Positions 13,529 to 64,000 are shown, counted from the first letter of the stretch. The stretch is DNA of 64,000 nucleotides from Botryllus schlosseri (GCA_051294905.1 CM119385.1:19778001-19842000), one strand, 5' to 3'. The notes: generated by a model from the sequence alone, not told the origin. A program made the numbers and translations.

Positions 13529-13594
13529 CTGAAGTTTGAATGGAAAAAATTGAATTGAAAATGTCACGAAATTTAAATTACAAAGCCAACAATC

Positions 13595-17439: not shown

Positions 17440-17480
17440 ATATAAATATACCAGTATATAACGGACACGAATAATCAAAC

Positions 17481-39847: not shown

Positions 39848-40073
39848 GGGAATTCCCAAACAGTGATAGTCAAAGATCTCTCTCTCAACGAGAATTGGCC
39901 ACGTCGTCATACAAATGAGCTATAAGCATATCATGACGAACGCTCTTTTGTTATTATGCACTGTCGAGGCTTCCAGAACCTAACGAACACAATGCCATAA
40001 TCTCAGCCCTCCGTTTGATTACTATTTTGTTGGTACATGGGGATTCCCGATTTTTTCACCTGGTTTATATATA
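39848..40073 (+). promoter_or_regulatory. Putative promoter of tri-UBL gene 1: two NF-kB consensus sites plus TATA-like element
   Basis: GGGAATTCCC (39848-39857) and GGGGATTCCC (40039-40048) both match GGGRNWYYCC. TATATATA at 40066-40073, ~60 nt before the ATG. Confidence 0.6.
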
Positions 40074-40131
40074 TTCAGCAGGTTACTGATAGAGCATTCA
40101 TTTGTCTATTTGTCATATGCAAGAAAGCAAC

Positions 40132-40806
40132 ATGAAGATTACTATCATATCTCTGACTGGCCAAAGAATACAACTCGATGTACACCAAGGTGACAAAGTT
40201 GTAGATTTGAAAAAAAGATTAGCTCTATCTCAGAATGTTGGCATCGACCAAATCAAGCTGATATTCAATGACGTAGCAATGACAGACGACGAAAACACAA
40301 TGTCAAGTTACGGTCTCGTGGAGGGCAGTGAGATTCAGATGGGTATTGATCAGAGCTCGACCATCAAGATTACGGTGGATCTCCTCGACGGGGTCCGGCA
40401 AGTCTTCACAATCGACTGTAACGGACAGGTCCAAACGTTGAAGTCGAAAATAAAAGACCATACACGGATTCCTGTAGATGTGATCGATCTGTTCTTTGAA
40501 GGAAAACCAATTTCATGCGGAAAGCTCACTCATCACTCCATAAGAGATGGGTCAACACTGCAGATGAAGTTAAAGAAAATTCAGGTCACTGTGACTACGC
40601 TTGATCAGAAGAAACTGAACATGGAAATCTCCCACACGGAAACTGTCGATGATTTCAAATCCCGTCTGTATCAGGAGACTAGGGTACCGGTTTCGCAGCA
40701 ACGCTTGATATGCAACGGGCACCAGTTCAACACAGGACTCATGGTGGACTATGACATTCGCACCGGGAGCATTATTAACATGGTGGGGCGCCTCAGGGGA
40801 GGATAA
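40132..40806 (+). CDS. Intronless triple ubiquitin-like domain protein with terminal RLRGG (tri-UBL 1), 224 aa
   Basis: Three beta-grasp repeats of about 76+73+75 aa. The third is closest to ubiquitin (SQQRLICNGHQF...MVGRLRGG-stop); no internal GG. Start taken as CAACATGAAG (40132) by homology with the paralogs; an in-frame ATG also exists at 40117. Confidence 0.92.
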   Translation: MKITIISLTGQRIQLDVHQGDKVVDLKKRLALSQNVGIDQIKLIFNDVAMTDDENTMSSYGLVEGSEIQMGIDQSSTIKITVDLLDGVRQVFTIDCNGQVQTLKSKIKDHTRIPVDVIDLFFEGKPISCGKLTHHSIRDGSTLQMKLKKIQVTVTTLDQKKLNMEISHTETVDDFKSRLYQETRVPVSQQRLICNGHQFNTGLMVDYDIRTGSIINMVGRLRGG

Positions 40807-41324
40807 TATAACTGCCGATGAATACCGTACACAGATCTACGTTAATTTTTTCCACTACGTTATTTGTATTGCCATCTTTCTTTGCGTGTAAAATTATCTG
40901 GTGACTGTTCGCATCAGTTATAATACATTTATTTCGTTTACGCTATCGCATTATATTTACGGCAGTTATATCAAGTTATTTCAGCGCTAGAATGATTCGC
41001 AATGACTCGTGAGCGAAATAAGGTAACGAGAAAGACAACGCACAAGCCTATATGTATGGCAATGGATTGTGAAAGTCGTCCAAGGTCATCCAACGAAATG
41101 TGTGTCGATACCGCGAAAAGAAACGCATAACCACTATACCTCTTCAGTCCAGTGGCGTAGCAGCCACCTGGCGGTTCTGGCTCTGCGCCAGGGGCGGCAG
41201 GCTCCAAGGGGGCGGCAAAATGAAGCTGCACAGTGAGAGAGATTATTTTCTTTTTCGCCTGCACAACCGAGATGTTTAGGCGACGGAGATGCGATACGGA
41301 CTTCATAGTAAGATCAACTAGTCG

Positions 41325-41478
41325 GAACCCCCGTTTTTTCCTCCTCCGTCATTGCTGACCGCCTAGCGGGATAACCGCCGATACCAGTTTTCGAGTCATT
41401 GGCCTGACCAGGCCGGGGACCGAACCCACGACCTACCGATCAAGAAGCCGTACGCATCACGATTACACTATCTCGCTC
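41325..41478 (-). mobile_element. tRNA-derived SINE (second family)
   Basis: Minus strand has A-box-like GAGATAGTGTAATCG and B-box GGTTCGGTCCCC (41415-41427), then a body containing AAAACTGGTATCGGCGG. Confidence 0.65.
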
Positions 41479-41883
41479 CGCACAGTGTACACAGCCGGCT
41501 AAAAGAAACGTAATTGGTAGTCCTATAGCTGGCGTCCCGTGAGCTAAAATTTAATCAAGCAGGTCTCAATCGTCGCGCTGATTCCGAAAACACGAATTAA
41601 TATGTTGACATGGCAATGGAACCACTCCGAAATAGCCGCCAAGGCCGATCGTTCGATTGTACTCGAGACCCGTTTTGAGTTGGCAACCACTGGCATAAGC
41701 GGTGTCTTACAAGCCTGGAATTGTGCCGTGCTACATGTCGGTAGTTACGGAATCACAAATAAGAAATATCAGCCTGGTGTAAATGACCATTGTAGTCGAC
41801 AAACACTATGATTACCACAAACGACATTAGGGTTGAGTAGGCTACATGGTAAATGCGGATAATGCGAGTCTTCTCGCTTCTCG

Positions 41884-43045
41884 CTTGGACCGGTCCTTTT
41901 CACCTTATATGTCAACGACATTTTTGAAACCTCCTCATTGAACACCACACTGTTCGCTGATGATACTCACCTCCTCTCTTCCGCATCTTCGACGGCAGAG
42001 CTGGATGCCCTGACTGGTGACCAAATGCCCAAAAGTCCATGAGTGGACGGCCCAGAACAACCTTTGCATAAACGCCTCGAAATCGCAATTGCTGACAGTA
42101 AATTCAAAAAATAACCTAACCGTTAATATCGCTGGTCAGCCCGTTTCCGACACAGATAATGCCAAATATCTCGGAGTTTTACTGGACTCGAACATGTCCT
42201 GGAAGAGTCATATTCAGTCCCTAGAAACTAAATTATCACCGAAGTGCGGCCTGTTCTACAGCCTTGGACGCTTCATGCCTGCATGGGTTCTTCTGATACT
42301 CTTTAAATCCTTAATCCAATCGAAGTTACATTATGGCATCCTCTGTTGGGGGGCTGCCAGTAAAACTGCACTCAAGCCACTGCAGAAACTACAGCATAAA
42401 GTACTCCGAATCATAGCTAGGGCCCCAAAGGGGCCTGGCTGCCCATCCAATAAGTCGCTGCTGAAGAGATTCGGCGTCCTAAACATAGAAGATATGCGGA
42501 AACTAGAAATCGCCAAGTTTACGTATCAGTTTCACTGCGGTCGTTGCCCCGAATATTTCAATGACTTCTTTACCTCTGAATCAAAAGCGCACAAGTACAA
42601 CACACGCGCGTCCACGTCGTCCAAATATCATATGATCGACCGAAAAGATCATCGCTCCATCAAATATGCCGGACCTGATGTGTGGAACAGTATCCCGCCG
42701 GCCATCCGACAGTCGACGAGCATGTCCACATTTAAGTCGAAATACAAGCAATTACTACTAAATAAATACAGTCCATCCTCAAGATTACCGGACCACGACT
42801 GACCTATCGATCTCGCTTCCCATGACATGCCGCCCTATTTCTTGTCGCATTCTTTTTTTCTATACTATCTTCTTTACTTTCATTCAGTGTGCATGCCTCC
42901 TCTTTACATCGCCTAGGCCAAGGTGGGTGTCAGATTCCATAGACTACTTCTTGTCGCTTCGACATCTTCCTGTCTTTTCATTGTATCGCATTTTTGTGGT
43001 GTATTGAACTGATAAAATTGCTAATAAACCAATGATGATGATGAT
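41884..43045 (+). mobile_element. 5'-truncated non-LTR retrotransposon (CR1/L2/Jockey-like RT C-terminus, 3' UTR, (ATG)n tail)
   Basis: LGPVLFTLYVND...LFADDT at 41884-41967, then a frameshift into ORF 42017-42802 (KYLGVLLDSNMSWKSHI, YGILCWG, LQHKVLRII). AATAAA followed by an ATGATGATG tail at ~43023-43045. Confidence 0.9.
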
Positions 43046-43289
43046 TGTACGAACTTACGCGTAAGCTCCACTATCGCACGCTGCGCATGCGCAATTGCGC
43101 AAACACTACACGTATATAATAACATACACTCACTAAAATTGGACCTAGCATGGCCTACTAGTAGGCCATGGACCTAGTAAGCAAGTAGTGGGGAATCTCG
43201 ACAGACTAGGGCCGCGGGCCACATTATCTTGTAAGACGGAAAACAGTCCGCGGGCCGGACAAAATCCCTTCGCGGGCCGTATGTTGCCC

Positions 43290-43880
43290 GCCCATGACTT
43301 AAGAGATATGTTTGGATTTTTGAATTCCCACGCGCTGCTGCAAAGCGAAATTGACAATTTATTCACCATCGCTTTTAGAAGCAATTCTTGGAGTTAGCTG
43401 CGAATATTGTCACGCCTTATGGCTGTCTTATACCTACAAATTAGGGATCATATCTATCAGAAGATTTCTAGCTTTTCGTACAAACCAATATGAGGCCTCT
43501 AGGACGTACACAAATTAAGTTATGATCATATGAAGTTGTTCAACTTGAGATTTTAAATGGGTCAAGAGGCTGGTGCGGAGCAGTGAAACCACGTATGATC
43601 ATAGTGCAACAGCGTTTGATGTTTTACCGCGGTTAGTTAATGCAAAGCTACTTGATTCGACACGATATTTAGGCTCGTGCTCGTGTCTGAAACTTTATCT
43701 GACCGTTGGTGTTTCAATTGCGAGCTGCGTGAGGAGCTTCTCAGAGCTCAAACTGATTAAGTCTTATTTACGTTCTACCATGAATGATGATCGGCTATCA
43801 GCTCTATCCATTCTGTCTACAGAAAGAGACTACGTTCAAAAACTCGAATTTGAGGGTATTATCGCTGATTTTGTTTGAAG
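43290..43880 (+). pseudogene. Degenerate hAT transposase C-terminus (dimerisation domain, ZMYM1-like type)
   Basis: LYLTVGVSIASCVRSFSELKLIKSYLRSTMNDDRLSALSILS matches the hATC motif (S-x-E-RSFS-LK-IK-x-LRSTM-x-x-x-RL), with E>V. Upstream fragments are interrupted by stops; MITE-like CGCGGGCC repeats at 43210-43290. Confidence 0.8.
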
Positions 43881-43913
43881 CGGCTATTGATTTCTACAGG
43901 GTTGGTTCGATTG

Positions 43914-44020
43914 GTTTGAAATAAGGACAGATTTGTTTGAAATGAGGAGAGTCTCATGTTTGAAATGAGGATAGTCATGTCAGAAATAAGGATAGTCATG
44001 TTTGAAATAAGGATAGTCGC
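43914..44020. repeat. ~21-bp tandem repeat, 5 units
   Basis: Units of the form GTTTGAAATAAGGATAGTCAT. Confidence 0.85.
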
Positions 44021-44079
44021 TATATTCACTATAAAGTCAGTTGCAGTACCAGGCACGACTTCCCAGTGGTAACCCAGTC

Positions 44080-44812
44080 CGAATACATCCCAGACATGAT
44101 GTCCGAACACGCCCCAGACACGATGTCCGATTGGCAGCACAGGCCGAACACACCCCAGACATGATGTCCAAACACGCCCCAGACACGATGTCCGATTGGC
44201 AGCACAGGCCGAACACACCCCAGACATGATGTTCAAACACGCGCCAGACACGATGTCCGGGTATCAACGCAGGCCGAACACGCCCAAGACACCATGTCCG
44301 GATGGCAGCACATGCCGAACACACCTCAAACATGATGTTCGAACACGCCCCAGACACGATTCCCAGTGTCAACACAGGCCGAACACACCCCAGACATGAT
44401 GTCCGAACACGCCTCAGACACAATGTCCGAGTGTCAACACAGGCCGAACACGCCCAAGACACCATGCTGAATGGCAACACAGACCGAACACGCCCCAGAT
44501 ACGGTGTCCGAGTGTCATCTCAGTCTGAACACAAACCAGACACCATGTTTGAATGGCCGAACACACCCCAGACATGATGTCCGAACACGCGCCAGACACG
44601 ATGTCCGATTGGCAGCACAGGCCGAACACACCCCAGACATGATGTCCAAACACGCCCCAGACACGATGTCCGAGTATCAACACAGGCCGAAGCCGCCCTA
44701 GACACTATGTCCGAATAACATTACAGACCGAACACGCCCCAGACACGATATCCGAGTGTCAACTCAGTCCGAACACAACCCAGACACCATGTTTGAATGG
44801 CCGAACACGCCC
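44080..44812. repeat. GC-rich compound minisatellite (~20-23-bp subunits in higher-order repeats)
   Basis: Recurring CCGAACAC(A/G)CCCCAGACA(T/C)GATGT interspersed with GATTGGCAGCACAGG / GAGTGTCAACACAGG / GTTTGAATGG variants. Confidence 0.92.
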
Positions 44813-46483
44813 TTGGAAAACGATTGATAAGATGCTTGAATCGGGACGGCAGAGTTTGGCGATTGAATATAATGCTGACGTTCCAATGTAAGCTTTGCGG
44901 AAGTACGAAGAGTCATATACATTTACAGAATTGCAGTCAGAAGACAGAACATTCGAAACTGTTACCCAATGGTTATTGTTGATGTTCAGTATTTGAACGA
45001 ATTTCGATTTGGGAGTGTATGACGGCGCGTTTCCAGGAATGTAGCAGCTGCTGCTGACCAGACCGTCCACAGTCGGAAAATCCAAAGACAACCTCCACAT
45101 ACAATGATCGATTATATCGCTGTTTAGCCATAGATCCGATTCTAGAATTCGCTTGTTTCGCGAGCCAATAGTCGCTAAATGAGGAGAGACAGTTCTTTTA
45201 GCAACAAAGCGATGAGAAAGAGGCCGACAGTTATGCGATACAACAGATCGAACAGAAAGACCGGGCTTGTTCTTATCGACACCGCGTAGTGCTTTTTTTG
45301 GAGCCTGAAAGTATTTGCCGATGTGTCGATTCGGAGGATCATTTCTAAAGGAATTTTTCCACACTTCCACTTCTTCTGGGGGGGTATTAATTGATTCTGG
45401 CAACTTGCCCTTCATGGGATGATTAGCAAATCTGTTCAAATTATCGTAAAATTCTCGAATCAAGGCGGTGTGCAATTCGTCATAGACCATTGCAACTTGA
45501 TCCAGCTTTTCGTATCGACGGCCGTCCAGGCGCGAACGCTTGAGTTCCTGATTGGATTTTTCCATGCTACCAGACGTTCGGCAATCGCGCGTTAAATTCT
45601 GATATGGGCTGGATTCCAAAGATTTGAAAAAGGTGTCATATGCTGCGTAGGTGAGGTTACTCCCAAAACGGCCCAGATTCCCAGTGAGTAAGCTCGTTAT
45701 GTACGGAATCCTTGGAAGAAAATTCTTCTTGAAAGAAGCAACCATTTCAGGCATGCAGTACCTATTTTTGCCAGCGGGTACTAGAGATTCCACCTCAGCC
45801 ATAGCCCGTGAAATTACAGTTTCCAAAACTCCCACGAAGAGATTGACTCCGGTCGACTCATCGCCAGCTTCGTCAAACATATCATCGGCATTTTCAGTAG
45901 AGCAAAATTTGTTATCTTCGCGTGTTATTTTACCGAGAAAAAAATGCAAAGATTTGTCCGCAGCAGTCTCGTTATTGGTGTTCAATAAGATAGTGAGATG
46001 ATGTATATGAAGCAATATGAAGTTCCAATCAGAAGATTCAACGAGCAATCCAAAAATATACATCATCTCCTGAAACCTGCATTTATTGTTTGAGCATAAG
46101 GTCTTGAAATTTTTGATTACGTGACTTGCACACAATTTGAGAAATGTTTTTTTCAAATCATTCCCAGTGGCTGTCCCGGATATAACCCTATAGCAGCGCT
46201 GAAGATAGAACTCAACGGACTCTTCCATGAAATTGCCCAAAATCGAGGTTATCAATACTACGCTTCCATCGCAGATGAAAAGCCGCGCAGCGGTAGGGCC
46301 ACGAAACACGTCCTTTTCGTCACAGCGAAATTGAAAAAGGAAGTTGCTGACCGTGGCTATGTTGTGTCGATTACTCAAAAGAGAGGCAAGAGCAATTGGA
46401 GATTTCCCTTTTACAGGGTGCCTAACAACCAACTCATACATATAAAATGTTCCTTGTACTGCTCTATCGGTTGATGATATCAA
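44759..46483 (-). mobile_element. MULE/Mutator-like DDE transposase fragment fused to a truncated Ulp1/SENP (C48-like) protease domain; 574-codon open frame
   Basis: MULE-type motifs FICDGS (second D), CASH (CxxH) and RTSGSMEKSNQELK (E); first D absent, frame closed upstream by a stop. C-terminal WLNSDIID...HWVTVS...VYDS runs into the minisatellite before the catalytic Gln/Cys. Confidence 0.7.
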
Positions 46484-46779
46484 AACCCCACAACAGAATC
46501 ATTTTATAATGATTTTAGACGAATTCATCAACGTATATATATAAAATGACCAATTTCGAATTCTAAGGTGGGGAGGGGCATGGTGGATTTGACCCCATAT
46601 CGGAATCACCAAAACATACCAGAAAAAATTATTTCATGCGGAGCACACGATTCCGAGTTTGTATTTCTATATGGGGCGCGTCATTTTTCTCCGCTGTTCG
46701 CATCTGTACTGTGGTGCTCTGATTGCAAAAGACGCAATACTGAAATGGAAAATGAAGACGCATTGAATCGCACGTAGCG

Positions 46780-46935
46780 CGAAGAAAATTTCCCGATTTA
46801 TTAAAATCTCTCAAACATTCGGAAGTCAATTCGCAAATTCAATTTGCATGTCGACCGCCGCCAACACATACTAATTGAATTACGTGTCGACGGCCGCATA
46901 GAATTCCTTCTACGGCCGCAGGTTTGCCAACCCTG
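46780..46935. mobile_element. One-ended fragment of a MITE related to 48170-48821
   Basis: Ends GGTTTGCCAACCCTG at 46935; interior resembles the reverse complement of 48175-48300; other end not found. Confidence 0.55.
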
Positions 46936-47812
46936 CTGTAATATGTCATAACAACCGGTGCAATACCTCCTCTATCACGGTTACTGAATATATTTCCATA
47001 ATTGCTGCTGTTCGAAATGTCCTTAGTCATTATGCGTTGTCGCGAAGACCAATGATATATATACATTGCAAAGACGTATCTCCAATTCCGGAAGTAGCCA
47101 CCCCCGATGAACTGCTAAAAGTATGATGTGAGTCTTCGACCAGGTATACTTTCTGAAACTACTTACTTGAGTAACCTACTTTTCATACCTTAATTTTCTA
47201 CTTACAATTGAAGTGGTTTTCTCGTGTCTTGTAATTGAGTAGAGCTTTACGACAATATACACTTCTAGATGAGTAACAATGCTGACTATATTGGTCACGT
47301 CTACTAACTATAGATACAAATTTTTTCTCAAATGTTGCACAATATATAGGTGGCAATGAAAAAAGTCGCAGGCTAGTTAATACATAAGCGTTATTAATTC
47401 ACTAACGAACAGCTCTTTAATAAGAATCGATATCCCTATATGGCTAGCGTAGTACCCATGTAATGCCCCAAGAGAGATACTCTATGATCGATCGTGTGAC
47501 TTTCTATTGAAACTGTTCAAAAAGGCTATACGCTACAAGCTACAGCATATGTTTGCAGAGTGTACGATACTAACCCGCCTACGCACAACGAACCCCTTTC
47601 ATTATTTTGCATGGTCACACCAACACATAAAGCAATACAACACCAAACCTTGAGTTTTGTCAGCCAATAGTCAGAACCACAAGGTACATTACATGATTAT
47701 ATTTATTACACCGCTATAAATAAATATTATACGATCTGATGACCTCACGATCTACCATAGAAATGATAGAATATGTTTGAAAACTTGGATATAGCGAAAA
47801 TGGTATTTCAGC

Positions 47813-47892
47813 ATGAAGATATGTATTGTTCCGCTAAACGGCTGAACGGACAGAATTTGACATTCGGGGTACGTCAAGGTGACAGTGACAAA
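47813..47892 (+). pseudogene. Frameshifted 5' remnant of a fourth tri-UBL gene
   Basis: ATG reads MKICIVPLNG, then an 8-nt tandem duplication (CTAAACGG/CTGAACGG), then QNLTFGVRQGD (tri-UBL 3: MKIYVKTLNGQTFQFEVRQGD). Exact GGTACGTCAAGG shared with tri-UBL 2 and 3. TATAAATA at 47715-47722. Confidence 0.8.
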
Positions 47893-48169
47893 TTCGTTCT
47901 GTCAGTAATAACGAAGACACACACTTGGTCACGTGATACAAGCTACTACAGTCATGGTTTTCATTGCGTGAAAGAAGGTTAAAATCATTTCCTGTTAGAT
48001 GCATAGGGCTGGGTTCAATGATACGTGTGCGCGAATCCGAAACTAGCAGTAAACTGAAGGACAACGAGGAAAAATGCAACCCGACTCCAATGAGAGTATT
48101 TTTGTTTGATTTAGTTGTACACCCAGAGCCATTAAACTCAAAAATGTTCTACAATGCAATCAGCTACGC

Positions 48170-48821
48170 CAGGGGTGACCAACCTGCGGTCATGGACACG
48201 TAATTCTAATAGTATGTGTTGACGGCCGTGCACATGAAAATTTAATATACGAATTGACTCCTAAATGTTTAAGAGATTTTAATCAAAAAATGTTGCGCTC
48301 CATATAGAAGTATCAACTTGGAATCGTGTCTTCCTCACGAAAGAAATTTGTTTCTGGTGCGTTTGGGCAATTTCAATATCTTTCCACTATACCGACAATC
48401 CTGATGGGAGGTCAAGAAATAACAGCAGGCAAAAAAGTGACTAATTACAATTGGCCCATCCGAAGATACATCATCATTTATAACTTGCCCCAAATTTTCG
48501 AAAACACACCCTCCATCAACTGTACCGGAAAATCTGATCACATGGGCCGAGACAGGATACATGTTTGATGAGAATATGTGAATATGTCTGATCCAATAAT
48601 ATATTCATATCATGAGCTGACCAGTCGCGATTTCGGTGCGTATAGTAAGCCGATATAAAGAAATGGATTCGTCCGGACCTCACCAAAAATCGACATCGAC
48701 AGCTTAAAGTGAGTATTTCGCGTCCTATTTGTTCAGTACGAACGTTGCCCTGGAATGCGGTCGTAGACTACATGACTAATCGAAATGCGGCCGTGAATAC
48801 CAAAAAGGTTGGCCACCCCTG
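48170..48821. mobile_element. hAT-type MITE
   Basis: TIR CAGGGGTGACCAACC / GGTTGGCCACCCCTG; perfect TSD AGCTACGC (48162-48169, 48822-48829). Confidence 0.92.
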
Positions 48822-50384
48822 AGCTACGCAATCATTTCGTGATAGGAATGGATTGATTATTCGGTAAGGAATTTCTAATTGGAATATAGCCTGAATACTG
48901 CGTACAGTTGGCTACGTAATGCATCAATCGTTTCAACACTACGCAGGAGTTGCCTTCTAAACCTAAACCGCTCCCATATGCTCGCACCGAGCAATTTTAT
49001 AGCCAGCACCCCAATCGCCCATTGCATGGCCAGCGGCCCCTTCACGCTAGCGAACGCCCCCAGGGGGCGCTGGCGCCAGCTTTGGGAGCCAGCGCCGTTG
49101 TTAAATTATTCGGTATTCGGTACTCGATACAACCAGTGACATTATTTCGCTGTATATCGCAGTCATCACCACCCATGCTGTTTCCCGCGCATAGCCGAGC
49201 ATAGTTGGTAAAGGCCGCCTAAATCTCTAAATGTTTTTCAGTAGTTGCTACACCTATCCTTAGTCACTCATCGCCAGTTTGAACTTTCCATTCATGTAGC
49301 CGCATGAAAAGCCGCTAAATATAGGGATAAAATTGCTACATTGCCAACACAGGTCACCGTGAGTTGATGCTCTTACTAACCATTGCTTATGCTCATTGCT
49401 CCTGTTATTTTCATAACCCTCGGATCTCAACTTGGTTATACGGATCATGACTTCTCCTACATCGCTCTCGGTCTCCTCAAGTCACATATCACGTCGCAAG
49501 AATATACAATATTCAGATTAGATTTGATGGTATATGTGGGAAACAAGTACAGTCGAAACAACTTTCGTAAAAATAAAGCACACATCAGACATCAAGCATG
49601 CACAGTGCACACATCACATTATGCAACCACATAGCCACTGTTTTCGGGTACCAAAATATTCGCTGCTATCGCATTTCGGAAGTACAGAACAAAATGCGCG
49701 AACGCGAGCATGGGCACTGGGCAGCCAATCTACTCGGTAATTTCGTATATACGATATGGTGATCATGTTCTACCCAGACGCATTCACTAATTGGCACTAT
49801 ACGGGATCTATTTACTCATAAAGGACTCGCAAAGATAAGAAAAGAATTAGTACATATTACGACGCGTAATGGTATGAATGAGATTTTTACAATAAAATCG
49901 ATTTATGTATAGTTAGCTATTATATCCATGTAATTAATTTCCTAGTCAATGGCTCGAGAATAAGGACATATTCACTTAAACGCGATCATAGCACCAGGAC
50001 GGGTATTCCCAAGAGCCATGCTCAAAATGCTCATTATTAATCATTAATCAATGATAGGTCTTGTGACTTTCTAACACGCCACGCATGCATGAGTGTTGCA
50101 CATAGCATAATATTTACACGCCTACGCATCGCAAAGTCTATCTTGTCGAGACCTTCCCCATAACTTTTAATATGTATATTCTGGATTTTACAGAGCATGT
50201 AAGGTCCCAGCTGGAGGGTATATGATGAGGGTATGCATGACACCAACATAATCATAAGGTGGATTTCCATGTCATTTGCTTCCCTACAATGTAGCAATGC
50301 AATAGCGGTTTTAGGCGAGTGCCATGAAACAGATTTGAGAAACCGGCTATCGTATTCAAGCAGTAGCATTAGTCGGGAATCGGA

Positions 50385-51047
50385 ATGAAGGTAAACATTC
50401 AAGCCATGAACGATCACGAGTTTAATTTTGAGGTACGTCAAGGAGACACGGTCGGGGATATGAAGCAAAAATTAGCTATATCTCAGCATGTGGGCAGCGA
50501 CCAGATCAAGCTAATGTTCCAAAACAATCCGATGGATGATGATAACAACACAGTGTCTTCTTACGATGTCAAGGAAGGCGACTGTATTTTTATGGTCACC
50601 GACTGCAATTCGCTAATCAAGGTAATGGTAGATGTTCAAGGAGGACAGTCGAGAGTTTTCACAGTCGACTGTAATGAGCGAATCGACCAGCTAAAAGCAA
50701 GAATACACAAGGAGGCTGGGTTTCGTGCGGACCTGATCGAACTGTTCCTTGGCGTAAATCAGATAGAGCGCGGAAAGCTGATGCATCACTCCGTCAAAAA
50801 TGGGTCAAGACCGAAGCTAAGTATGAAGAGAATTCAAGTCACTGTGATTACGATTGACCAGAAGAGCCTGTCCATGGACATCACCCACACCGAAACCATC
50901 GAAAGTTTCATGTCTCGCCTACATGTTACCCCATCGCAATATCGCTTGATATGTAATGGAAAGCAAGTGCACATCGAGCGGATGGCGGACAATGACATTA
51001 CCAACGGAGATACTATTTACATGGTCGCACGACTCAGAGGAGGATAA
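50385..51047 (+). CDS. Intronless tri-UBL 2, 220 aa, terminal RLRGG
   Basis: Paralog of tri-UBL 1 and 3 (FEVRQGD...KQKLAISQ...DQIKL). Open frame ends MVARLRGG-stop; 4-aa deletion in the third domain. Confidence 0.88.
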   Translation: MKVNIQAMNDHEFNFEVRQGDTVGDMKQKLAISQHVGSDQIKLMFQNNPMDDDNNTVSSYDVKEGDCIFMVTDCNSLIKVMVDVQGGQSRVFTVDCNERIDQLKARIHKEAGFRADLIELFLGVNQIERGKLMHHSVKNGSRPKLSMKRIQVTVITIDQKSLSMDITHTETIESFMSRLHVTPSQYRLICNGKQVHIERMADNDITNGDTIYMVARLRGG

Positions 51048-51932
51048 TACCTGAAATTCTCTATTCGATGTGTGCTTTTGCAGTAATGAAGTGAATTTCT
51101 GCTCTCAAATCTCTCATATGCTTCGATTACCTCCATATTGTCTAATTCCTCCCTTTTAAATCGATTATTTTATGTATATAATAGGCCTATAGGTCTACAT
51201 CGTGCGGTGTTCTAAACATACACGATAATACTTGTGAAAACTGCTCCAGATATCCATTCCCTTTATGTTCTGCCACGACCCGTTTCAATTATTGGCCAGA
51301 GGAATTTGGCTCAAATGTACAACAGAGAACCTTGTGTCCAAATTTCAGAAAGATTGCTTCATTAGGCTGTATGACTGATTTCACAGTTCTGTGGGTTGCT
51401 TAGCCCCTTAAACCCCGCGGATTGATACTGTTATATATACTGGCACTATGACATAAGCCAAAGAAATATTTCGGATTTGATATTAATTAAGTCCGTAAAA
51501 GTGTTCATAGTATTGTTATTTTACTAGTCAGATCTTTGTGGGGCGATTTTATCAATGGTATGGTATTTTCGTTGTATTTTTGATTAATGCTCTCCATGTG
51601 AGAAACTACTGTCCGTATTATATCATTTGAATAATACCGAATTCGTCAGTGGATTTGAAAATAAACCTGTTTTGTTATCAATACTTTCTAAAATGAATAT
51701 ACGACCATTACACTGTAATGTACCATTTTACTAATGTATACTATCGGCTATTACGATATTTTTGACGGGTAGCATAATATTTCCCAGCAGGGCGTATTTG
51801 GTCTACCGGCCACATCATGAATTCCCCATGGTCTAAATCAGCAGTGTCAAATACGCATCGCGCGAGATCATTTTGTGTTGTCGGCGTCGACATTTTCGAT
51901 TTTGAAATATTCGACAATATCTAACTGCGGGA

Positions 51933-52125
51933 AGCGAGTGACGCTGTTGGTTAAGCCGTCATAGCCACGACACCAGTTCAAACCCCAGTTCTGCCTAACT
52001 TCTATGTGTCGAAGGTTTATCTGGGCTCCTCATCGCTAACCTCACTGCTATTCAGCCCAGCGTGAAGGTGAGCCGAGCCAAAAATCGGCAGTACGGGTGC
52101 ATGAAAAACGGGGGAACATTTAAAT
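51933..52125 (+). mobile_element. Degenerate tRNA-derived SINE
   Basis: B-box-like AGTTCAAACCCC at 51975-51986. Body GAAGGTTTATCTGGGCTCCTCATCGC resembles GAGGTTTATCTAGGCGCCTACTCGCC of the 39.5-kb SINE. Confidence 0.55.
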
Positions 52126-53348
52126 AATTGCGGTTCGCATATCGAGGGAGAATGTTAAACTTACCACGTACTGCTGAGTATAGACTAATTCAACTTCTAC
52201 TTCTACTTAACTGTTTGGTTTAGTCAAATCTGCTTGGTTTTTCCTCATTGTATTAGCAACGTTGAAGGGACTTTGGGGATAGGTTTAGATCAATTTTATG
52301 AGTGCAATATGTCATAACAACCGAAGAAATACTACCTTTACCACGGTGACTGAATATATGTTCCAAAATTGCAGCTGTTTGTAATGTCATTAGTCATTAT
52401 GCGTCAGTCGCGAAGACCAAGGATATATACATATTCCGATGACGTATCTCCAATTCCGGAAGTAACAACCCGGGATTAGCTGCTAAAAGTATGCGATGAT
52501 TCGACCAGATCTACTTTCTGAAAATACTTTATTGAATAGCCTACTTTTCATACCTTCATTTTCTACTTCCAATTAAAGTGGCGTTGACATGTTTTGCAAT
52601 TGAGTGGAACTTTACGACATCTACTTCTACTTGAGGACCGATGCTGACCACTTTGACCAGATCTGCTAACGAGATGTAAATCCACTCTCCAATGTTGCAC
52701 AGTATTCAGGCAGCAATGAAAAAAATTGCAGGACTAGTTAATACATAAGCGTAATTAATTCACTAACGAACAACGCTTTAATACGAATCGATCTCCTTAT
52801 GGATGGCGTAGTACCCATGTAATTCCCCAGGAGCGATACTCAATGATCGATCGCGTGACTTCCTATTGAAACTGCTTACAAAGTCTACACGCTACAGCAA
52901 ACATGTTTGCAGAGTGTACAATACTAACCCGCCTACGCATAACGAACACTCCTTTATCATTTTGCGTGACCACACTAACACATAAAGCAATGCAACACCA
53001 TACCTTGTGTTTCGTCAACCAATATATTCAGAAGCACAACTGCAAGGGCGTAGCCAGAAAAAATATTTGGGAGGGGCGAAAAACTCGATGACGTTAATGA
53101 GCACCCCGCTTAAAGATAAGTAAAAATAGGTAACAACGATGGCCTTGGGTCCTTATTGGATGAGTAACACAACATCTGGGGCGACCGTATTACCTAGGTT
53201 ATGGTTTTTGTACATGCATTCCACTCACAGACATAAAGTAATGTGATAATATATGATTGTGGAAATATCGGGCGTCAACAATTTTCAAATTTTTCATGGT
53301 TAATGAATGAAATTGATTCCTTATTGTTACGTGCATATTGCAAATACG

Positions 53349-53976
53349 CATGATTGTAATGACTCGAGTTGCGATTTTCTGATGACTTGACTTGACTCGA
53401 GTCAATTTCTCAAAACACAGAAAGGACTCAACTCCAGTCAATCTATGTAATGAATCGACTTGGGCTCAAGTCATTGCGCATGACTCGAGACTCAGGCGGC
53501 TAAGACCGACATTTCATTGTAATTTCGAAGAATAGTTAAGTAACCACACTATTGGTAGTTCGTACATTTGTAGTGGTACTTGAAAATGAGACTATAGAAA
53601 CTGGTAAAAGTGAGAGAAAAATGTATATTATAAATGCGAACCGTTCGATATTACCGAACAGAGTTATAAAAATTGGGTCAAGTGTCAGAAAATATTCGGG
53701 TTTATTTCCGTATGAATGTAGTACTCAATTGTATATTGAAGCTCTGTACCTCCAAGAAGCTCTTCAAAGTGGATTGAACAAGATTTTAACTGAAAACTGA
53801 GCAGTCAACGCAATGACTTGGACTCGGACTCAAGTCATAATACTATGACTTGGACTCGACCCTCTGCTCACTGACTTGGACTCGGACTTGACTCGGTGGT
53901 GAAGTGAAAATGACTCGTCTTGATTCGAGTCAAAACTATAAAAGAGAGATTGACTTGTGACTTGGTTACAACCCTG
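53349..53976. mobile_element. hAT-type MITE, GACTCGAGTC-rich family (copy 3)
   Basis: Ends CATGATTGTAATGACTCGAG...GGTTACAACCCTG; TSD CAAATACG/CAACTACG (7/8). Shares internal AAGACCGACATTTCATTGTAATT with copy 1. Confidence 0.8.
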
Positions 53977-56797
53977 CAACTACGTTTTAATCATCAGATT
54001 TACCGGTAAGACTGATATAAGTGGTGTCATCGAACATTCAGGGAGCACTTAATTATACATCTTGAACTATATGTTCATAGCACACGGCAAGACTATTTAT
54101 GAATTTCTAAATGGTGTGGGCCGGGTGGGACAGTTGTCATTTATTGCTGTTACACTCCATGACTTGCGGAGAATGCTGCCACAATTCAAAACATCGCTCA
54201 CGCGCAGGGCTGTACCCACGTAGCCAGAAAAAACTTTTTTTTTTGTGGGGAGGGGGGCAGTTTGTAATTAGTTTATGCAGCTCCCCCGTGGGAGCACCTC
54301 ACAGAACTGTACATCCTTCCATTGCACATTTTCATCACTACCCTTTTATACATACAATTCTTAGACGCACGCACACACACATACACATACCCCATGGAAG
54401 CTCCCACTTGCCAACTATTACTTGTATTAGGCGATCGTTTAAAGGACGAGCCCAAATCGCTGACACTGACGAACAATCAGTGTGAATTTCGGGCCTATAG
54501 TCGCGCGGAGCGTAAATATTTTGGAATAAATGAAATAATTTGATCAATAATATCGGTGCGTGTATACGAGCAAGTGGTATCCATTCTTATTAATTACTCC
54601 GTTAAAGCACGGTTATTTAGTAACCTCTGGTAAAGATTGACGCTACTATTAAGATTGGAATCGCTAATACATACCAAACCAAATTAAAAAACTTCTTTGA
54701 TCAGACTCGTGCGATTTCATATCAGCACTTTTTAACTGGTGGTGGTGGCGATATTTTCCTGTGTCGAACACATTTATGTTGAAGGCGTCTGATCACAGGA
54801 ACAGATCATTAGGCGCCAGCCATTTAAGCACCCGAAAATCTATATCGAAGGCTTCGGAATACATGCGTCGTTTTTCTGGACGTCAATCATTTTGGAAGCG
54901 CACTTTGCGGAGTCGCGTGTATCAGCCTACTCTATGTGTCTTTGTGTGTCCCGGAACGGAAATTGCCGGCGATTAGGGCCCTTGCCCACACTCTCCTGTC
55001 GAGGCAGGGATTTCGTTTCGACATGGTGAAAACTGATTCTCCCCATCCTCACCATGCTGACAAATTATAGTCTGTTTGCGCTATCCGCCTAACTATCGAA
55101 TCTCACAAGTTGCTTGGCTTTCTTTGTGGTGACGCAAGTATATTAACGTAAAATTGTTGTACACCCGAAGTAATTGTTACATTGTTCGAATGTTTGCATT
55201 CGATAGTTACATCGTGTATATCTACTGCAAAGGATAACAAATCATATAGACCAAATAAAATATAAAATGTCAAACTTTTTGCGTACCACTTGGAAAGGTC
55301 TCGCGGACAAGCACCACAGTTTGAGAACCACTGATGTAGCCGCATGAAAAGTCGCTAAATCTAGGGCCAAAACAGCGAAATTGCCAACACAAGTCACGAT
55401 GAGTTGATGTTATCACTGCCCAATGCTTATGTTCATTGCTCATGGTATTAATCACACTCTGGGTCTTGACGTGGTCACATGAATCATGGCTGCTCTTACG
55501 TAGCTCTTGTACTCCTCAAGCCACGTAGCCGCATAAATATAGAATATTCAGAGTAGATTTGATAAGATGTGTCACACGCAGGTAGAGTCGAAACAATTTT
55601 TGTTAGTAAACCACGCACACATCAAGCGTACGCAGTTTACGCACATCGCATTATGCACCTACATATCTATTGTTTTCGATGTAAATATTCCTACTATTTA
55701 TTTCGAAAGTACAAAAACGCTCAGACCTGAATTGCCGACATACCCGAATTTCGATATCAGTATGTTATGAAGCCTATATCGGATATAGTGATTACTGATT
55801 ATGTTCTGGTTCTACACATACGTATTCGCTAGGTGGCACTATCATTAATCTATCCATATTCCATATCTATCTACAGAAACGGACTCACAATGACAGGCGG
55901 ATGCCGCGGATCATGCTAGTGATGAGTTTTTACAATAAAATCGAATGTGTATAGTTAGCTACCATATCCAATATCCATGTAATTAATTCGCTCACCAACG
56001 GGGGTCGAGAATAAATTATATTCACTATTACAGGTAGCATAGTACCAGTACGGGGTATTCCCCAAGAGTGATGCTCATTGATCAATGACAGCATTGATTG
56101 GTCTTTTGTGTGATTTTCAAACATACCATACAACCATACACAACAAATATTACGCATTGCACAGAACATAATATTCACACGCCTATACGTTGTAAACGCT
56201 CTCTTGTCTTTTTGAGTTGTGGATTGAATGAACAAAACTCCCTTAACATTATATCATACAAGCTTCGGAACGCTTTCGGCCGCATTCAAGAGTTGCTGAA
56301 CTCAGTATTGGCGAATGCGCCGCTAGGTTTAGTCGAATCTCACGTGTAATGTTATGAAATGAAACCATTATGGCGGTATAAAAATAGGTCACACAGGACA
56401 TTTGCATCGAGAACGGTTGAGGTTTCCTCTGACCTTGGTCCCTAGCCTCTAACCTTTAATAAGCATATCCTGAATTTTACATAGAATGCAAAAGTGTGAG
56501 GCCTCATCTCGAAGGTACATGATTTCATAAGAGATGGCAAAGGAGGTGTGTCTAGATCTCTGCTTAGGGCCACCCACTTTTTACGTCGAAAATCTTGGCA
56601 TCTCTCTCGTATGTCCGCCATGTGCATAATTCAATATGATTTCACCAAGCTTGCCTAGCGCTGGTCGATATAGCCAACACCATCTTCTCTCCTTGCATTG
56701 CACCATCTTAACCTAGATAGCCAAAGAATATTTCAGAACCTAACGCCAGCAGCATTACATCATCCAAGCTTGGATCAGGACACCAAAATATTCACGA

Positions 56798-56840
56798 GGT
56801 GAATTCCCGTGTGATTTTTTTCTTCGCCGCAGTATAAAAA
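56798..56840 (+). promoter_or_regulatory. Putative promoter of tri-UBL gene 3: kB-like site plus TATA box
   Basis: GGTGAATTCCC (56798-56808; reverse GGGAATTCAC, one mismatch to consensus) and TATAAAAA (56833-56840), ~120 nt before the ATG. A further GGGGTATTCCCC lies at 56052-56063. Confidence 0.55.
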
Positions 56841-56960
56841 CAGCGCCCTTCTGCGGGTGCCGTCAGACAGATTTCAGAAACCGCTCTTCGACGAGGACCG
56901 TGCAAAATATAACAGAGAAACAGAATAATATTCAAGCAACAGCATCAGCCACGAATCAAA

Positions 56961-57641
56961 ATGAAGATATACGTCAAGACCCTGAACGGGCAAACATTTC
57001 AATTCGAGGTACGTCAAGGCGACAAAGTCGGTGATGTGAAACAAAAGTTAGCGATATCCCAGCAAGTCGGCAGCGACCAGATCAAGCTGCTTTTCCAAAA
57101 GAAACCAATGGATAACGACGACAACACAGTGTCCCAATACGATGTCAAAGAAGGCGACACTATCCATATGGTCACCGACAACAACTCCCGTATCAATGTA
57201 ACGGTTGAAATTCAGCCCGGGCAATCGAACATTTTTTCGGTCGACTGGAATGAGCAAGTCGACCAACTGAAAGCAAAAATACACAAGGAGACTGGGTTAC
57301 GGGTGGACCTGATCGAACTGTCCTTTGGCGCGAAACAAATACAGGGCGGGAAGCTGATGCATCACTCCATCAAAAATGGGGCAACGCTGAAGCTAAGTAT
57401 GAAGAGAGTTCAAGTCACTGTGACTACGCCTAACCACAAGAACCTGTCCATGGATATCTCCCACACGGAAACCGTCGAAAATTTCAAATCTCGTCTGCAA
57501 GGAGAAACTGGCTTAGTCGCTTCGCAGCAGCAGTTGATATGCAACGGGAAGCCACTGGCCAGTGGAGTCATGGTGAACTTGGGGTGCAATATCGTCGACG
57601 GGAGCATTATTAACATGGTGGGACGAGTACGAGGAGGATAA
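56961..57641 (+). CDS. Intronless tri-UBL 3, 226 aa, terminal RVRGG
   Basis: Starts MKIYVKTLNGQ (cf. ubiquitin MQIFVKTLTGK); three UBL repeats; ends MVGRVRGG-stop. AATAAA at 58072-58077. Confidence 0.92.
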   Translation: MKIYVKTLNGQTFQFEVRQGDKVGDVKQKLAISQQVGSDQIKLLFQKKPMDNDDNTVSQYDVKEGDTIHMVTDNNSRINVTVEIQPGQSNIFSVDWNEQVDQLKAKIHKETGLRVDLIELSFGAKQIQGGKLMHHSIKNGATLKLSMKRVQVTVTTPNHKNLSMDISHTETVENFKSRLQGETGLVASQQQLICNGKPLASGVMVNLGCNIVDGSIINMVGRVRGG

Positions 57642-63029: not shown

Positions 63030-64000
63030 TATTTATAACTGAGTAATATACACACGGGAATTCACCCTGTGATTGTGAATACACTGGTTGGAAAAAAGGT
63101 TCAGTGTTGTAATACTTTGAGAGTCGGATTTAGAAAGCTTGGGTACGATGGTGCCAGACAAAAGGATAAGATTGCGTTCGTTGTGCGTAAGCGGGTTATT
63201 ATTATGTACTCGGCAAATATGTATTCTGTAGCGTGTAGCCTTTGTGAACAGTTTCAATAAACAGTCACGCGACCGATCATTGAGTATCGCTTTTGGGGAA
63301 TTTCACACACCGGTACCACGCTAGCGATCTGGATAATAATTATTATGAACGTTAGTGAATGAATTGGACTCAGGTATCTGGACCTGTAGGTATTTTCTTT
63401 CTTTGCTTCCTGTATAATGTGCAGCGTTTGAGATTGATCCAGTAGTCACTAGGCAGTCGTGGTCAAAGTAGCCAGCGTTTCCACTCAAGTAGAAGTGACG
63501 TCTCAAACTTCGACTCAATTACCAATAGAAGTATCCCTATTCAAGACATGCATTTGAGATTGACATGTTAAAACTATACCTCAATTGGAAATAGCAAATG
63601 AAGGTATGAAAAATGCCGAAGTAAGCAATTTCAGCAATTGCTGCCATTGGCAAACATTTGTTGGATAATTTTGTTTGTGCTAAACGACTCGGAGTCGACT
63701 GTTATCAAAATACGCAAACCCAGACTTTTAGCCAACAGAAGGAGTTTTTGTACCATCTAAAATGGTACATTGAGCGTAAGCGCTCTCTTCGCCCCTATTA
63801 TTCGAAATTTCATGTTGATGACGTCATATTTGCGACACGATTGTTGATATACAATGTTCTTTCCAATTCTCTAAGTTGCTGACGATTAACCCTGACGAGT
63901 GTCAGCCGAAAATCTCCGGGTTCATTTCAATATGAATATGCTTTTCAACAGCTTAAGAAAGTAGAATTACTTCCGGAATTGCAAGATGCGTCGTTGCGAC
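63030..64000 (-). repeat. Inverted third copy of the block upstream of the tri-UBL genes, ending in a kB-like site and TATA
   Basis: Reverse complement aligns with 46940-47730 and 52305-53040 (GCGATACTCAATGATCG.TCGCGTGACT, TTTTCATACCTTCATTT, CAATTCCGGAAGTA). GGGAATTCAC at 63056-63065; TATAAATA on the minus strand at 63030-63037. Confidence 0.8.
63845..63945 (+). repeat. Hammerhead-repeat copy with mutated stem III
   Basis: AACC-CTGACGA-G(TGTCAGC)C-GAAA-ATCTC-C-GGGT at 63888-63921; AATATT has changed to AATCTC. Confidence 0.75.

What the first reader, a model, noticed from the sequence alone, without database searches (positions are those of the whole stretch)
40132..57641. Cluster of triple-UBL genes with one terminal di-Gly: a candidate ISG15/FAT10-like modifier family in an invertebrate
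Seen: three intronless ORFs (224, 220, 226 aa) each have three diverged ubiquitin folds. Internal junctions lack GG (GIDQSS/TDCNS/TDNNS; KLKK/SMKR), and only the C-terminus has R-(L/V)-R-G-G directly before the stop. Established: polyubiquitin precursors have near-identical, GG-ended repeats cleaved by DUBs, whereas ISG15 and FAT10 are uncleaved di-UBLs conjugated whole. Arg at position 72 is the E1 determinant separating ubiquitin/ISG15 from NEDD8, and all three proteins have it. Inference: these are processing-independent ~25-kDa tri-UBL tags, expanding and diverging quickly like immune effectors, possibly activated by UBA1 or UBA6. I know no characterised tri-domain conjugatable modifier of this kind, but cannot confirm novelty without a search.
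Basis: partly seen in the sequence, partly recalled or inferred. Interest (0 to 1): 0.88.

Follow-up and report, generated by a model that had tools for sequence, protein, structure and literature searches.

The report
Expressed triple-ubiquitin-like gene family, one terminal di-Gly
A marine invertebrate (probably a mollusc) carries a small, actively transcribed cluster of genes, each encoding three fused, diverged ubiquitin folds with a single free Arg-Gly-Gly end; it looks like an uncharacterised ISG15/FAT10-style protein tag that arose separately from polyubiquitin, but attachment to other proteins has not been shown.

Summary
Three intact + strand ORFs (40132-40806, 50385-51047, 56961-57641; 224, 220 and 226 aa) each hold three ubiquitin-family domains. 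Both internal junctions lack Gly-Gly. Only the C-terminus keeps R-(L/V)-R-G-G directly before the stop.

New evidence:
- Gene C is an abundant, unspliced mRNA of about 1.2 kb. Its cap site (56862-56865) lies about 30 bp after a TATA box, and its flanks are silent, so it is not an exon of a larger gene. Gene A is also present in RNA assemblies. Gene B expression could not be tested.
- Five same-architecture relatives (223-224 aa, 35-49% identical) come from three other public samples. All share the non-GG junctions, and 7 of 8 members end in RGG-stop.
- Each domain is under purifying selection (dN/dS 0.09-0.56).
- The AlphaFold model shows three confident beta-grasp domains and a floppy tail.
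- The nearest relative by sequence is ubiquitin / three-repeat polyubiquitin (about 30% identity), not ISG15 or FAT10.
- Copies arose by lineage-specific duplication, and two relics remain in the window.
- kappaB-like sites sit just upstream of the TATA position. The scan's note s1-274270, on this same stretch, saw these too.

Conjugation, the E1 used and immune induction all remain inferences. No description was found in the open-access literature searched.

The parts
39848..39857 (+). Distal canonical kappaB-type palindrome GGGAATTCCC upstream of gene A
   Evidence: Matches the pre-specified consensus GGGRNWYYCC; read in the sequence. Function not tested.
40039..40048 (+). Proximal canonical kappaB-type site GGGGATTCCC of gene A, 18 bp before the TATA-like box
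   Evidence: It aligns with the equivalent motif of genes B and C.
40066..40073 (+). TATATATA box of gene A (predicted promoter)
   Evidence: The start site was not mapped for this gene.
40132..40806 (+). Gene A coding sequence: tri-UBL, 224 aa, ends GRLRGG-stop. An in-frame upstream ATG at 40117 would add five residues (MQESN).
   Evidence: About 70% of the sampled words of 39950-41050 are held in RNA-run assemblies.
47821..47883 (+). Relic of a further copy: about 21 codons resembling the N-terminus of gene C
   Evidence: blastn 84% over 44 nt, E 6e-5; tblastn 57% over 21 aa, E 0.04. Weak but in register with the gene start.
50258..50268 (+). kappaB-like motif GGTGGATTTCC upstream of gene B; no TATA box follows it
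50385..51047 (+). Gene B coding sequence: tri-UBL, 220 aa, ends ARLRGG-stop; has a 4-residue deletion in domain 3
56798..56808 (+). kappaB-like motif GGTGAATTCCC of gene C, about 60 bp upstream of the cap site
56833..56840 (+). TATAAAAA box of gene C, 29-32 bp upstream of the mapped start
   Evidence: together with the start site.
56862..58095 (+). Gene C transcript: single exon of about 1.2 kb. The cap site is at 56862-56865 (the A of a TCAGAC initiator). The 3' end lies shortly after AATAAA at 58072-58077 and is approximate.
   Evidence: Template-switch-oligo tails abut 56862 (26 reads) and 56865 (92 reads). Depth is about 250-300 across the gene and 0 in both flanks. There are no splice joints. 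Collinear RNA contigs span 56875-58042 and 56914-58037 with no differences. Poly(A) signal read.
56961..57641 (+). Gene C coding sequence: tri-UBL, 226 aa, ends GRVRGG-stop
   Evidence: AlphaFold2 model with mean pLDDT 87.7 shows three beta-grasp domains.
62960..63066 (-). Inverted relic: promoter core (GGTGAATTCCCGTGTG, identical to gene C, then TATAAAT) plus ATGAAGATA (M-K-I) at 62986-62984. The frame stops after 21 codons with no further UBL similarity.

Best explanation
Shown: this is a tandem cluster of three paralogous single-exon genes, plus two decayed relics. Each encodes one polypeptide of three ubiquitin-derived beta-grasp domains. The family descends from a ubiquitin / three-repeat polyubiquitin-type gene. 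Both inter-repeat RLRGG processing sites have been lost: the first is replaced by D/Q-rich linkers and the second has a three-residue deletion. The protein therefore cannot be released as monomers by ubiquitin-type processing. The last domain keeps a free, flexible G-R-(L/V)-R-G-G tail that ends exactly at the stop codon, so no C-terminal trimming is needed. At least genes C and A are transcribed, C strongly, from a TATA promoter. All three domains are under purifying selection, and the layout is conserved in relatives from other samples. Inferred: the whole ~25-kDa unit is activated at its terminal glycine by an E1 that accepts Arg72-type tails and is attached to target lysines as a block. 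It would work like ISG15 or FAT10 but with three domains, and it arose independently of them. The conserved kappaB-like sites beside the TATA position suggest Rel/NF-kappaB-driven (stress or immune) induction; this is the weakest step.
For: - Three PF00240 domains per protein.
- End-to-end collinear alignment with linear tri-ubiquitin (5h07, E 3.8e-29; about 30% identity), with the junctions falling on the Ub-Ub junctions.
- Each domain's best solved relative is ubiquitin. The closest reviewed protein is the three-repeat Polyubiquitin-B.
- The model has mean pLDDT 87.7, with beta5 of one domain running almost directly into beta1 of the next. The last block of residues drops to pLDDT 57, so the tail is flexible.
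- Two adjacent domains superpose on mouse ISG15 at TM 0.83 and 2.3 A.
- RNA for gene C: cap-site tags, no splice joints, silent flanks, depth about 270 with only about 6% of the run read. Gene A is held in RNA assemblies.
- Five relatives of 223-224 aa from three other samples share both non-GG junctions. Seven of the eight family members end in RxRGG-stop.
- dN/dS is 0.18-0.43 over the whole gene and 0.09-0.56 per domain, at dS 0.4-3.
- A neutrally evolving ORF of this size stays open with P < 0.01 at 0.2 or more substitutions per site.
- kappaB-like motifs align in all three promoters. Two canonical sites lie within 300 bp of gene A.
Against: - There is no biochemical evidence of E1 charging or conjugates.
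- One relative (P0142) ends in KTRSG, so at least one paralogue works, or decays, without a di-Gly.
- The Ile44-patch residues of the C-terminal domain vary between members, and Leu71 is replaced by Gly. Use of the ordinary ubiquitin E1 is therefore uncertain.
- No E1, E2 or E3 gene lies in the window.
- The kappaB evidence is weak. The canonical consensus is not enriched window-wide (6 matches against 2.7 expected; 10 of 100 shuffles reach 6). The B/C motif pattern was defined after seeing it.
- Gene B has no TATA box, carries a deletion, and has no expression data.
- The ISG15-like domain packing may reflect AlphaFold's training on ISG15.
Confidence: 0.55

Rival explanations
1. It is a non-conjugated tri-UBL protein that acts free. 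It could be a proteasome or UBL-receptor adaptor, a decoy or inhibitor for deubiquitinases (including viral ones), or a stable mimic of a linear ubiquitin chain. The terminal RGG would serve binding rather than ligation.
For: Free ISG15 and free FAT10 also have non-covalent roles (abstracts of PMC9722776 and PMC13731433, listed). Domain 1 keeps the ubiquitin Leu8/Ile44-like/His68/Val70 patch better than domain 3 does. One paralogue (P0142) lacks the di-Gly. The top structural matches by E-value are linear tri- and tetra-ubiquitin bound to UBAN-type readers.
Against: The tail is not needed for the fold, yet it is among the best-conserved stretches: INMVGRLRGG in 5 of 8 members and RGG-stop in 7 of 8. 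UBL domains that are not conjugated usually lose it (general knowledge of integral UBL domains such as those of OASL, parkin and RAD23). Surfaces are only about 30% identical to ubiquitin, and the inter-domain RLRGG segments that linear-chain readers contact are gone.
Confidence: 0.27
2. These are decaying or neutrally drifting polyubiquitin duplicates (polyubiquitin-like pseudogenes) that happen to be transcribed and have no function of their own.
For: Only about 30% identity to ubiquitin. Decayed relics lie nearby. TE debris lies between the copies. Gene B has lost its TATA box and four residues.
Against: ORFs remain intact at dS 0.5-1.0, where the neutral survival probability is below 0.01. 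dN/dS is below 1 in every domain and every pair. Length stays constant at 220-226 aa, and the junctions and tail are conserved in relatives at 35-49% identity. Gene C is highly expressed from a well-formed promoter.
Confidence: 0.05
3. The ORFs are exons or domains of a larger protein, or a precursor that is cleaved into monomeric UBLs.
For: Many long poly-UBL proteins exist in the databases.
Against: For gene C, the transcript starts 96-99 nt before the ATG at a capped end and stops after a poly(A) signal. There are no splice joints and both flanks have zero depth. The stop codon directly follows GG in all copies. Neither junction has a GG, and the domain 2/3 junction has essentially no linker in the model.
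Confidence: 0.03

Closest known systems
Polyubiquitin-B type precursor (three head-to-tail ubiquitins, e.g. P0CG47; linear tri-ubiquitin structures 5h07/7eao)
   Same: Three beta-grasp units in the same register over the whole length. It is the best sequence and Foldseek match. The coding region is intronless, and the last unit has an RLRGG-type tail.
   Different: The units are only 26-32% identical to ubiquitin and differ from one another. Both internal RLRGG cleavage sites are lost. There is no extra residue after the final GG. The family evolves quickly (dN/dS 0.2-0.5) and is lineage-restricted.
ISG15 (vertebrate di-UBL modifier)
   Same: Fused, uncleaved tandem UBL domains joined by a short linker. 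It has an L-R-G-G type tail with Arg at the ubiquitin-72 position. Two adjacent domains of the model superpose on mouse ISG15 (TM 0.83, rmsd 2.3 A). The design is a block modifier with a presumed inducible promoter.
   Different: This family has three domains rather than two. Identity to ISG15 is lower (18-25%) than to ubiquitin (28-31%). ISG15 is made with a C-terminal extension in many species, whereas this protein ends at GG. ISG15 is reported only from vertebrates (PMC9722776 abstract). The UBA7/UBE2L6/HERC5 pathway and interferon control could not be tested here.
FAT10 / UBD (mammalian di-UBL modifier)
   Same: Tandem UBLs made with a free C-terminal GG that needs no processing. The promoter is plausibly NF-kappaB responsive. 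FAT10 is induced by TNF and IFN-gamma and conjugated through its di-Gly by UBA6/USE1 (abstracts of PMC4359146 and PMC10442930).
   Different: This family has three domains. Its tail is GRLRGG, not CYCIGG. Identity is about 21% (7pyv). There is no evidence for UBA6 use or for direct proteasome targeting.
Plant polyubiquitin-like genes and other diverged poly-UBL proteins (e.g. Arabidopsis Polyubiquitin 9, Q9FHQ6; many unnamed UBL-repeat proteins)
   Same: Arrays of diverged ubiquitin repeats derived from polyubiquitin genes. They appear among the structural and language-model neighbours.
   Different: They are not the same family: identity is no higher than to ubiquitin itself. Here the layout is fixed (exactly three domains, 220-226 aa, a single terminal RGG) and conserved across members.

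Membership tests
Ubiquitin superfamily (PF00240 beta-grasp) | Significant match to the ubiquitin family profile and a beta-grasp fold, for each of the three segments | tested here: met
   Three PF00240 stretches per protein, all above the gathering score. The AF2 model has three beta-beta-alpha-beta-beta units, mean pLDDT 87.7.
Polyubiquitin precursor | Near-identical ubiquitin repeats | tested here: not met
   26-32% identity to tri-ubiquitin, and the domains differ from one another.
Polyubiquitin precursor | RLRGG cleavage site at every repeat junction, plus extra C-terminal residue(s) | tested here: not met
   The junctions read D-x-x-S/V and L-K-K/R/N, with a 3-residue deletion, in all 8 members. 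The stop codon follows the final GG directly.
ISG15 | Two tandem UBL domains | tested here: not met
   Three domains.
ISG15 | Closer in sequence to ISG15 than to ubiquitin (orthology) | tested here: not met
   Ubiquitin chains lead every PDB sequence search. Foldseek identity is 18-25% to ISG15 against 28-31% to ubiquitin chains.
ISG15 | C-terminal LRLRGG-type tail | tested here: met
   GRLRGG, ARLRGG and GRVRGG; conserved in relatives.
ISG15 | Interferon-type induction and UBA7/UBE2L6/HERC5-dependent conjugation | not testable with these tools
   No expression-by-condition data and no genome-wide gene search were available.
FAT10 | Translated with a free di-Gly, no processing needed | tested here: met
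   The stop codon comes immediately after GG in genes A, B and C and in 4 of 5 relatives.
FAT10 | Two UBL domains, CYCIGG tail, UBA6/USE1 activation | tested here: not met
   Three domains and an RxRGG tail. About 21% identity to FAT10 in 7pyv. The enzyme used is not testable.
FAT10 | NF-kappaB / cytokine-inducible promoter | tested here: inconclusive
   kappaB-like motifs lie 18-35 bp before the TATA position in all three genes, and two canonical sites lie upstream of A. There is no window-wide enrichment and no induction data.
Conjugatable (type I) ubiquitin-like modifier | Exposed, flexible C-terminal Gly-Gly on the last beta-grasp domain | tested here: met
   The tail is present and conserved. 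pLDDT falls to 57 over the last residues.
Conjugatable (type I) ubiquitin-like modifier | E1 thioester formation and isopeptide conjugates that depend on the terminal Gly | not testable with these tools
   This needs biochemistry.

The most novel reading that the evidence does not exclude
An invertebrate lineage independently invented a block modifier of the ISG15/FAT10 type from a three-repeat polyubiquitin gene. It would be a ~25-kDa tri-UBL tag, ready-made with a free RGG end, switched on by Rel/NF-kappaB signalling and conjugated whole to host or pathogen proteins. It could use its own E1/E2 specificity, since Gly replaces Leu71 in the tail. It would be the first three-domain conjugatable ubiquitin-like modifier, and the first inducible tandem-UBL modifier outside vertebrates.
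Probability: 0.35. Interest if true: 0.82.

Novelty: new variant of a known kind. Interest (0 to 1): 0.66.

Why it matters
ISG15 and FAT10, the two known modifiers built from fused ubiquitin folds, are vertebrate inventions tied to innate immunity. ISG15 is stated to be known only from vertebrates (PMC9722776). A conserved, highly expressed three-fold version in an invertebrate, derived separately from polyubiquitin, would show that "fuse the repeats, keep one tail" is a recurrent evolutionary route to new protein tags. It would give invertebrate immunology a candidate inducible modifier. It would also give ubiquitin biochemists a natural test case for how E1s, deubiquitinases and the proteasome handle a three-domain tag. 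The claim is directly testable with a tagged GG versus AA construct.

Tried and rejected
- Word-indexed search of 5.8 billion protein clusters with gene C alone found nothing. The 5-sequence profile found five clusters. The 8-sequence profile added no new members, only weak generic ubiquitin hits.
- The exhaustive phmmer search was swamped by long polyubiquitins. Only P0136 and P0142 were informative.
- The window's own proteins are not in the 15-billion-protein collection.
- AFDB clusters, Swiss-Prot and ESM-Atlas fold searches returned only generic polyubiquitin/UBL neighbours with no closer family. The Atlas feature search gave the same.
- Organism identity is hidden. The only clues are a mollusc-dominated cluster for the neighbouring protocadherin and a marine-biofilm metagenome source for one relative.
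- Seven literature searches, including one for the signature tail peptides, found no description. One search call failed on syntax.
- The 574-aa and 261-aa ORFs between genes A and B have no Pfam match. I took them for transposon debris, not partners of the UBL genes.
- I considered a linear-ubiquitin-chain mimic and ranked it low, because the inter-domain RLRGG and most ubiquitin surface residues are gone.


Full report

Yes. The ORF listing returns three + strand ORFs at 40132-40806, 50385-51047 and 56961-57641, counted from the conserved M-K start. They encode 224, 220 and 226 aa. I call them genes A, B and C.

Each protein gives three separate matches to the Pfam ubiquitin family, with whole-protein E-values of 7e-34, 2.8e-26 and 2.8e-41.
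- The domain 1/2 junction reads GIDQSS, TDCNS or TDNNS.
- The domain 2/3 junction reads KLKK or SMKR.
- The proteins end in GRLRGG, ARLRGG or GRVRGG, directly followed by the stop.

tblastn with the three proteins finds no other full copy in the 64-kb window.

**2. What the proteins are related to**

A sequence search of the PDB aligns gene C end to end (residues 1-226) with linear tri-ubiquitin (5h07, E 3.8e-29). The domain boundaries fall on the Ub-Ub junctions.

Identity to tri-ubiquitin is 26-32%. The C-terminal domain searched alone again finds ubiquitin first. In the Foldseek PDB search, linear tri- and tetra-ubiquitin lead by E-value at 28-31% identity. ISG15 chains show 18-25% and FAT10 (7pyv) about 21%. 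Among reviewed proteins the closest is the 229-aa, three-repeat Polyubiquitin-B.

The family is therefore a derivative of ubiquitin, most simply of a three-repeat polyubiquitin gene. It is not an orthologue of ISG15 or FAT10. Relative to ubiquitin, the first inter-repeat RLRGG is replaced by an acidic/polar linker. The second has lost three residues including the GG.

**3. Structure**

An AlphaFold2 model built on the 8-member family alignment has mean pLDDT 87.7 and pTM 0.61. It shows three beta-grasp units.

Strand beta5 of domain 2 (residues 142-147) is followed two residues later by beta1 of domain 3 (150-155). Only four residues separate domains 1 and 2. Confidence falls to 57 in the last block of residues, as expected for a free ubiquitin-type tail.

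Two adjacent domains superpose on mouse ISG15 with TM 0.83 (normalised to ISG15) and rmsd 2.3 A over 148 residues. This is suggestive, but AlphaFold may be borrowing a learned arrangement.

**4. Are they genes?**

RNA evidence is strong for gene C. Many RNA-type runs of the same coded organism hold about 86% of the sampled words of 56700-58000.

Laying one 2026 bulk RNA-seq run and three older assemblies on 55800-58999 gave the following:
- Depth is about 250-300 across 56870-57720, with only about 6% of the run read.
- Depth is zero in the 1 kb upstream and in 58154-58474 downstream.
- There are no splice joints. The only joints are a few strand-switch artefacts.
- Assembled transcripts span 56875-58042 and 56914-58037 with no differences from the genome.
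- 26 and 92 reads carry the template-switch oligo sequence (…AACGCAGAGTACATGGGG) immediately before 56862 and 56865. This marks capped 5' ends.

Position 56865 is the A of a TCAGAC initiator. TATAAAAA lies at 56833-56840, that is 29-32 bp upstream. AATAAA lies at 58072-58077, where coverage ends.

Gene C is therefore a standalone single-exon mRNA of about 1.2 kb, with a 5' UTR of about 96 nt, a 681-nt CDS and a 3' UTR of about 450 nt. This refutes the "exon of a larger protein" caveat for this copy.

Gene A is held at up to 0.70 of the sampled words of 39950-41050 in RNA-run assemblies. It also lacks a TATA box and has a four-residue deletion in domain 3, so its status is less secure.

**5. 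Selection**

The paralogues are 49-63% identical.
- Pairwise dN/dS (Nei-Gojobori) is 0.37-0.43 over the whole genes at dS 0.6-1.0.
- For each domain separately it is 0.20-0.56.
- Among relatives from other samples it is 0.18-0.33 overall and 0.09-0.43 per domain.
- In a substitution-only simulation, a 226-codon ORF stays open in fewer than 1% of trials at 0.2 substitutions per site.

All three domains are thus maintained by selection, though far more loosely than ubiquitin.

**6. Relatives elsewhere**

The exhaustive HMMER search returned 5849 hits. Nearly all were polyubiquitins at about 30% identity. Two proteins had the same size and layout: P0136 (42% identical) and P0142 (40%).

Profile searches added P0152 (49%), P0153 (40%) and P0154 (35%). 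P0151 is the full-length form of P0136.

The sources are:
- a marine-biofilm metagenome (SAMN08714533; PMC6355793);
- run SRR32906208, with three paralogues;
- run SRR25569784.

All are 223-224 aa. All share both non-GG junctions, including the three-residue deletion. P0151, P0152 and P0153 end in INMVGRLRGG and P0154 ends in GRTRGG. P0142 ends in KTRSG and has therefore lost the di-Gly.

Mean pairwise identity is highest in the C-terminal domain: 0.49, against 0.43 and 0.42 for the other two.

In a maximum-likelihood tree rooted on tri-ubiquitin, genes A, B and C form one clade (support 89/94). B and C pair within it (98/99), and the clade is sister to P0152. P0142 and P0154 pair in the other clade (100/99). 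Duplications are therefore lineage-specific.

A second profile search found no further members. That collection is dominated by metagenomes, so this says little about the true range in animals.

**7. Cluster anatomy**

Homology between the gene units covers the promoter (about 200 bp), the CDS and parts of the 3' UTR for B and C. For A it covers essentially only the CDS.

Two relics show turnover:
- 47821-47883 (+) encodes about 21 residues resembling the gene C N-terminus.
- On the minus strand at 63066-62960 there is a copy of the gene C promoter core (a 16-nt identical GGTGAATTCCCGTGTG, then TATAAAT) and an ATG-AAG-ATA start. Its frame stops after 21 codons.

Between A and B lie ORFs without Pfam matches, which look like transposon debris. 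The neighbouring gene upstream is a protocadherin-like cadherin. Its nearest Atlas cluster is mostly molluscan, which is the only clue to the host taxon.

**8. Promoter motifs**

I checked it.

In the alignment of the three upstream regions, a Rel-type motif occupies the same column block:
- A: GGGGATTCCC
- B: GGTGGATTTCC
- C: GGTGAATTCCC

It is followed by a T-run and, in A and C, by a TATA box.

With the textbook consensus GGGRNWYYCC the window has only four distinct sites. Two of them (39848, 40039) lie within 300 bp upstream of gene A. Window-wide, however, the count is not significant: 6 strand-matches against 2.7 expected, and 10 of 100 shuffles reach 6. The B/C-type pattern occurs four times against 0.4 expected, but I defined it after seeing the sites.

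The relatives' contigs have TATA boxes at similar distances but no strict kappaB match. This remains a lead for inducible expression and is not evidence of it.

**9. Most likely mechanism**

Shown:
- One polypeptide of three ubiquitin-derived folds is produced.
- It has no ubiquitin-type internal processing site.
- It has one conserved, flexible, free RxRGG end.
- It is expressed, constrained and conserved.

Inferred:
- The tail is not required for the beta-grasp fold, yet it is among the most conserved segments and ends exactly at the stop codon. The simplest function is therefore C-terminal activation by an E1 and ligation of the whole unit to lysines, as with ISG15 and FAT10.
- Arg at the ubiquitin-72 position is compatible with ubiquitin/ISG15-type E1 recognition (established for UBA1 versus the NEDD8 E1).
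- The near-invariant Gly in place of Leu71 and the variable Ile44 patch of domain 3 leave the identity of the E1 open.

I give this reading about 0.55. A free, non-conjugated role gets about 0.27. Drift (pseudogenes) and the larger-protein or cleaved-precursor reading together get less than 0.1.

**10. Novelty**

Full-text searches found nothing describing a tri-UBL modifier. I searched for three, triple or tri ubiquitin-like domains, ISG15-like, FAT10-like or polyubiquitin-like proteins in invertebrates and bivalves, and the family's tail peptides. The library covers open-access papers only.

The ISG15 review PMC9722776 states that ISG15 has been identified only in vertebrates.

Diverged poly-UBL proteins are common in eukaryotes, so the building blocks are ordinary. 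The unusual parts are the fixed three-domain, single-tail layout, its conservation, its high expression, and the analogy to the vertebrate immune modifiers. I class it as a new variant of a known kind (tandem-UBL modifiers). The family is real, but its function is unproven.

Noticed in passing
window 47821-47883 (+) and 62960-63066 (-): Two short relics of further tri-UBL copies. One is an N-terminal coding fragment. The other is an inverted promoter-plus-start fragment with a 16-nt stretch identical to the gene C promoter. Both indicate birth-and-death turnover in the cluster.
   Followed up: partly
window 40117-40131 (+): Gene A has an in-frame upstream ATG, in a weaker context, that would add MQESN to the N-terminus. 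By homology the conserved M-K-I start at 40132 is the likely one.
   Followed up: no
window 42017-42802 (+) and 44759-46483 (-): A 261-aa ORF and a 574-aa ORF lie between genes A and B. Neither has a Pfam match at E <= 0.01. They look like transposon-derived sequence and were not characterised.
   Followed up: partly
window 8076-22437 (-): Several exons encode cadherin repeats. They include an N-terminal exon with a signal-peptide-like start (21565-22437; PF00028 and PF08266). This is a protocadherin-like gene whose nearest ESM-Atlas cluster is mostly molluscan.
   Followed up: partly
window 58551-58999, and ORF 59845-60363 (-): A second, weakly expressed region begins about 450 bp downstream of gene C (RNA contigs from 58551 onward). 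It lies next to a 172-aa minus-strand ORF with a single transmembrane-like segment, and is possibly that gene's 3' end.
   Followed up: no
window 57459-57624 and 57927-57970: A few RNA-seq reads (4-5 each) join opposite strands inside gene C. They are most likely library hairpin or strand-switch artefacts.
   Followed up: no
L002 (P0142, SRR32906208): One relative ends in KTRSG instead of RxRGG, while its sister paralogue P0154 keeps GRTRGG. It is a natural di-Gly-less variant and worth comparing functionally.
   Followed up: partly
window 2780-2875: An earlier scan note (s1-274269) reports a dispersed ~130-bp repeat with a minimal hammerhead ribozyme. I did not examine it.
   Followed up: no
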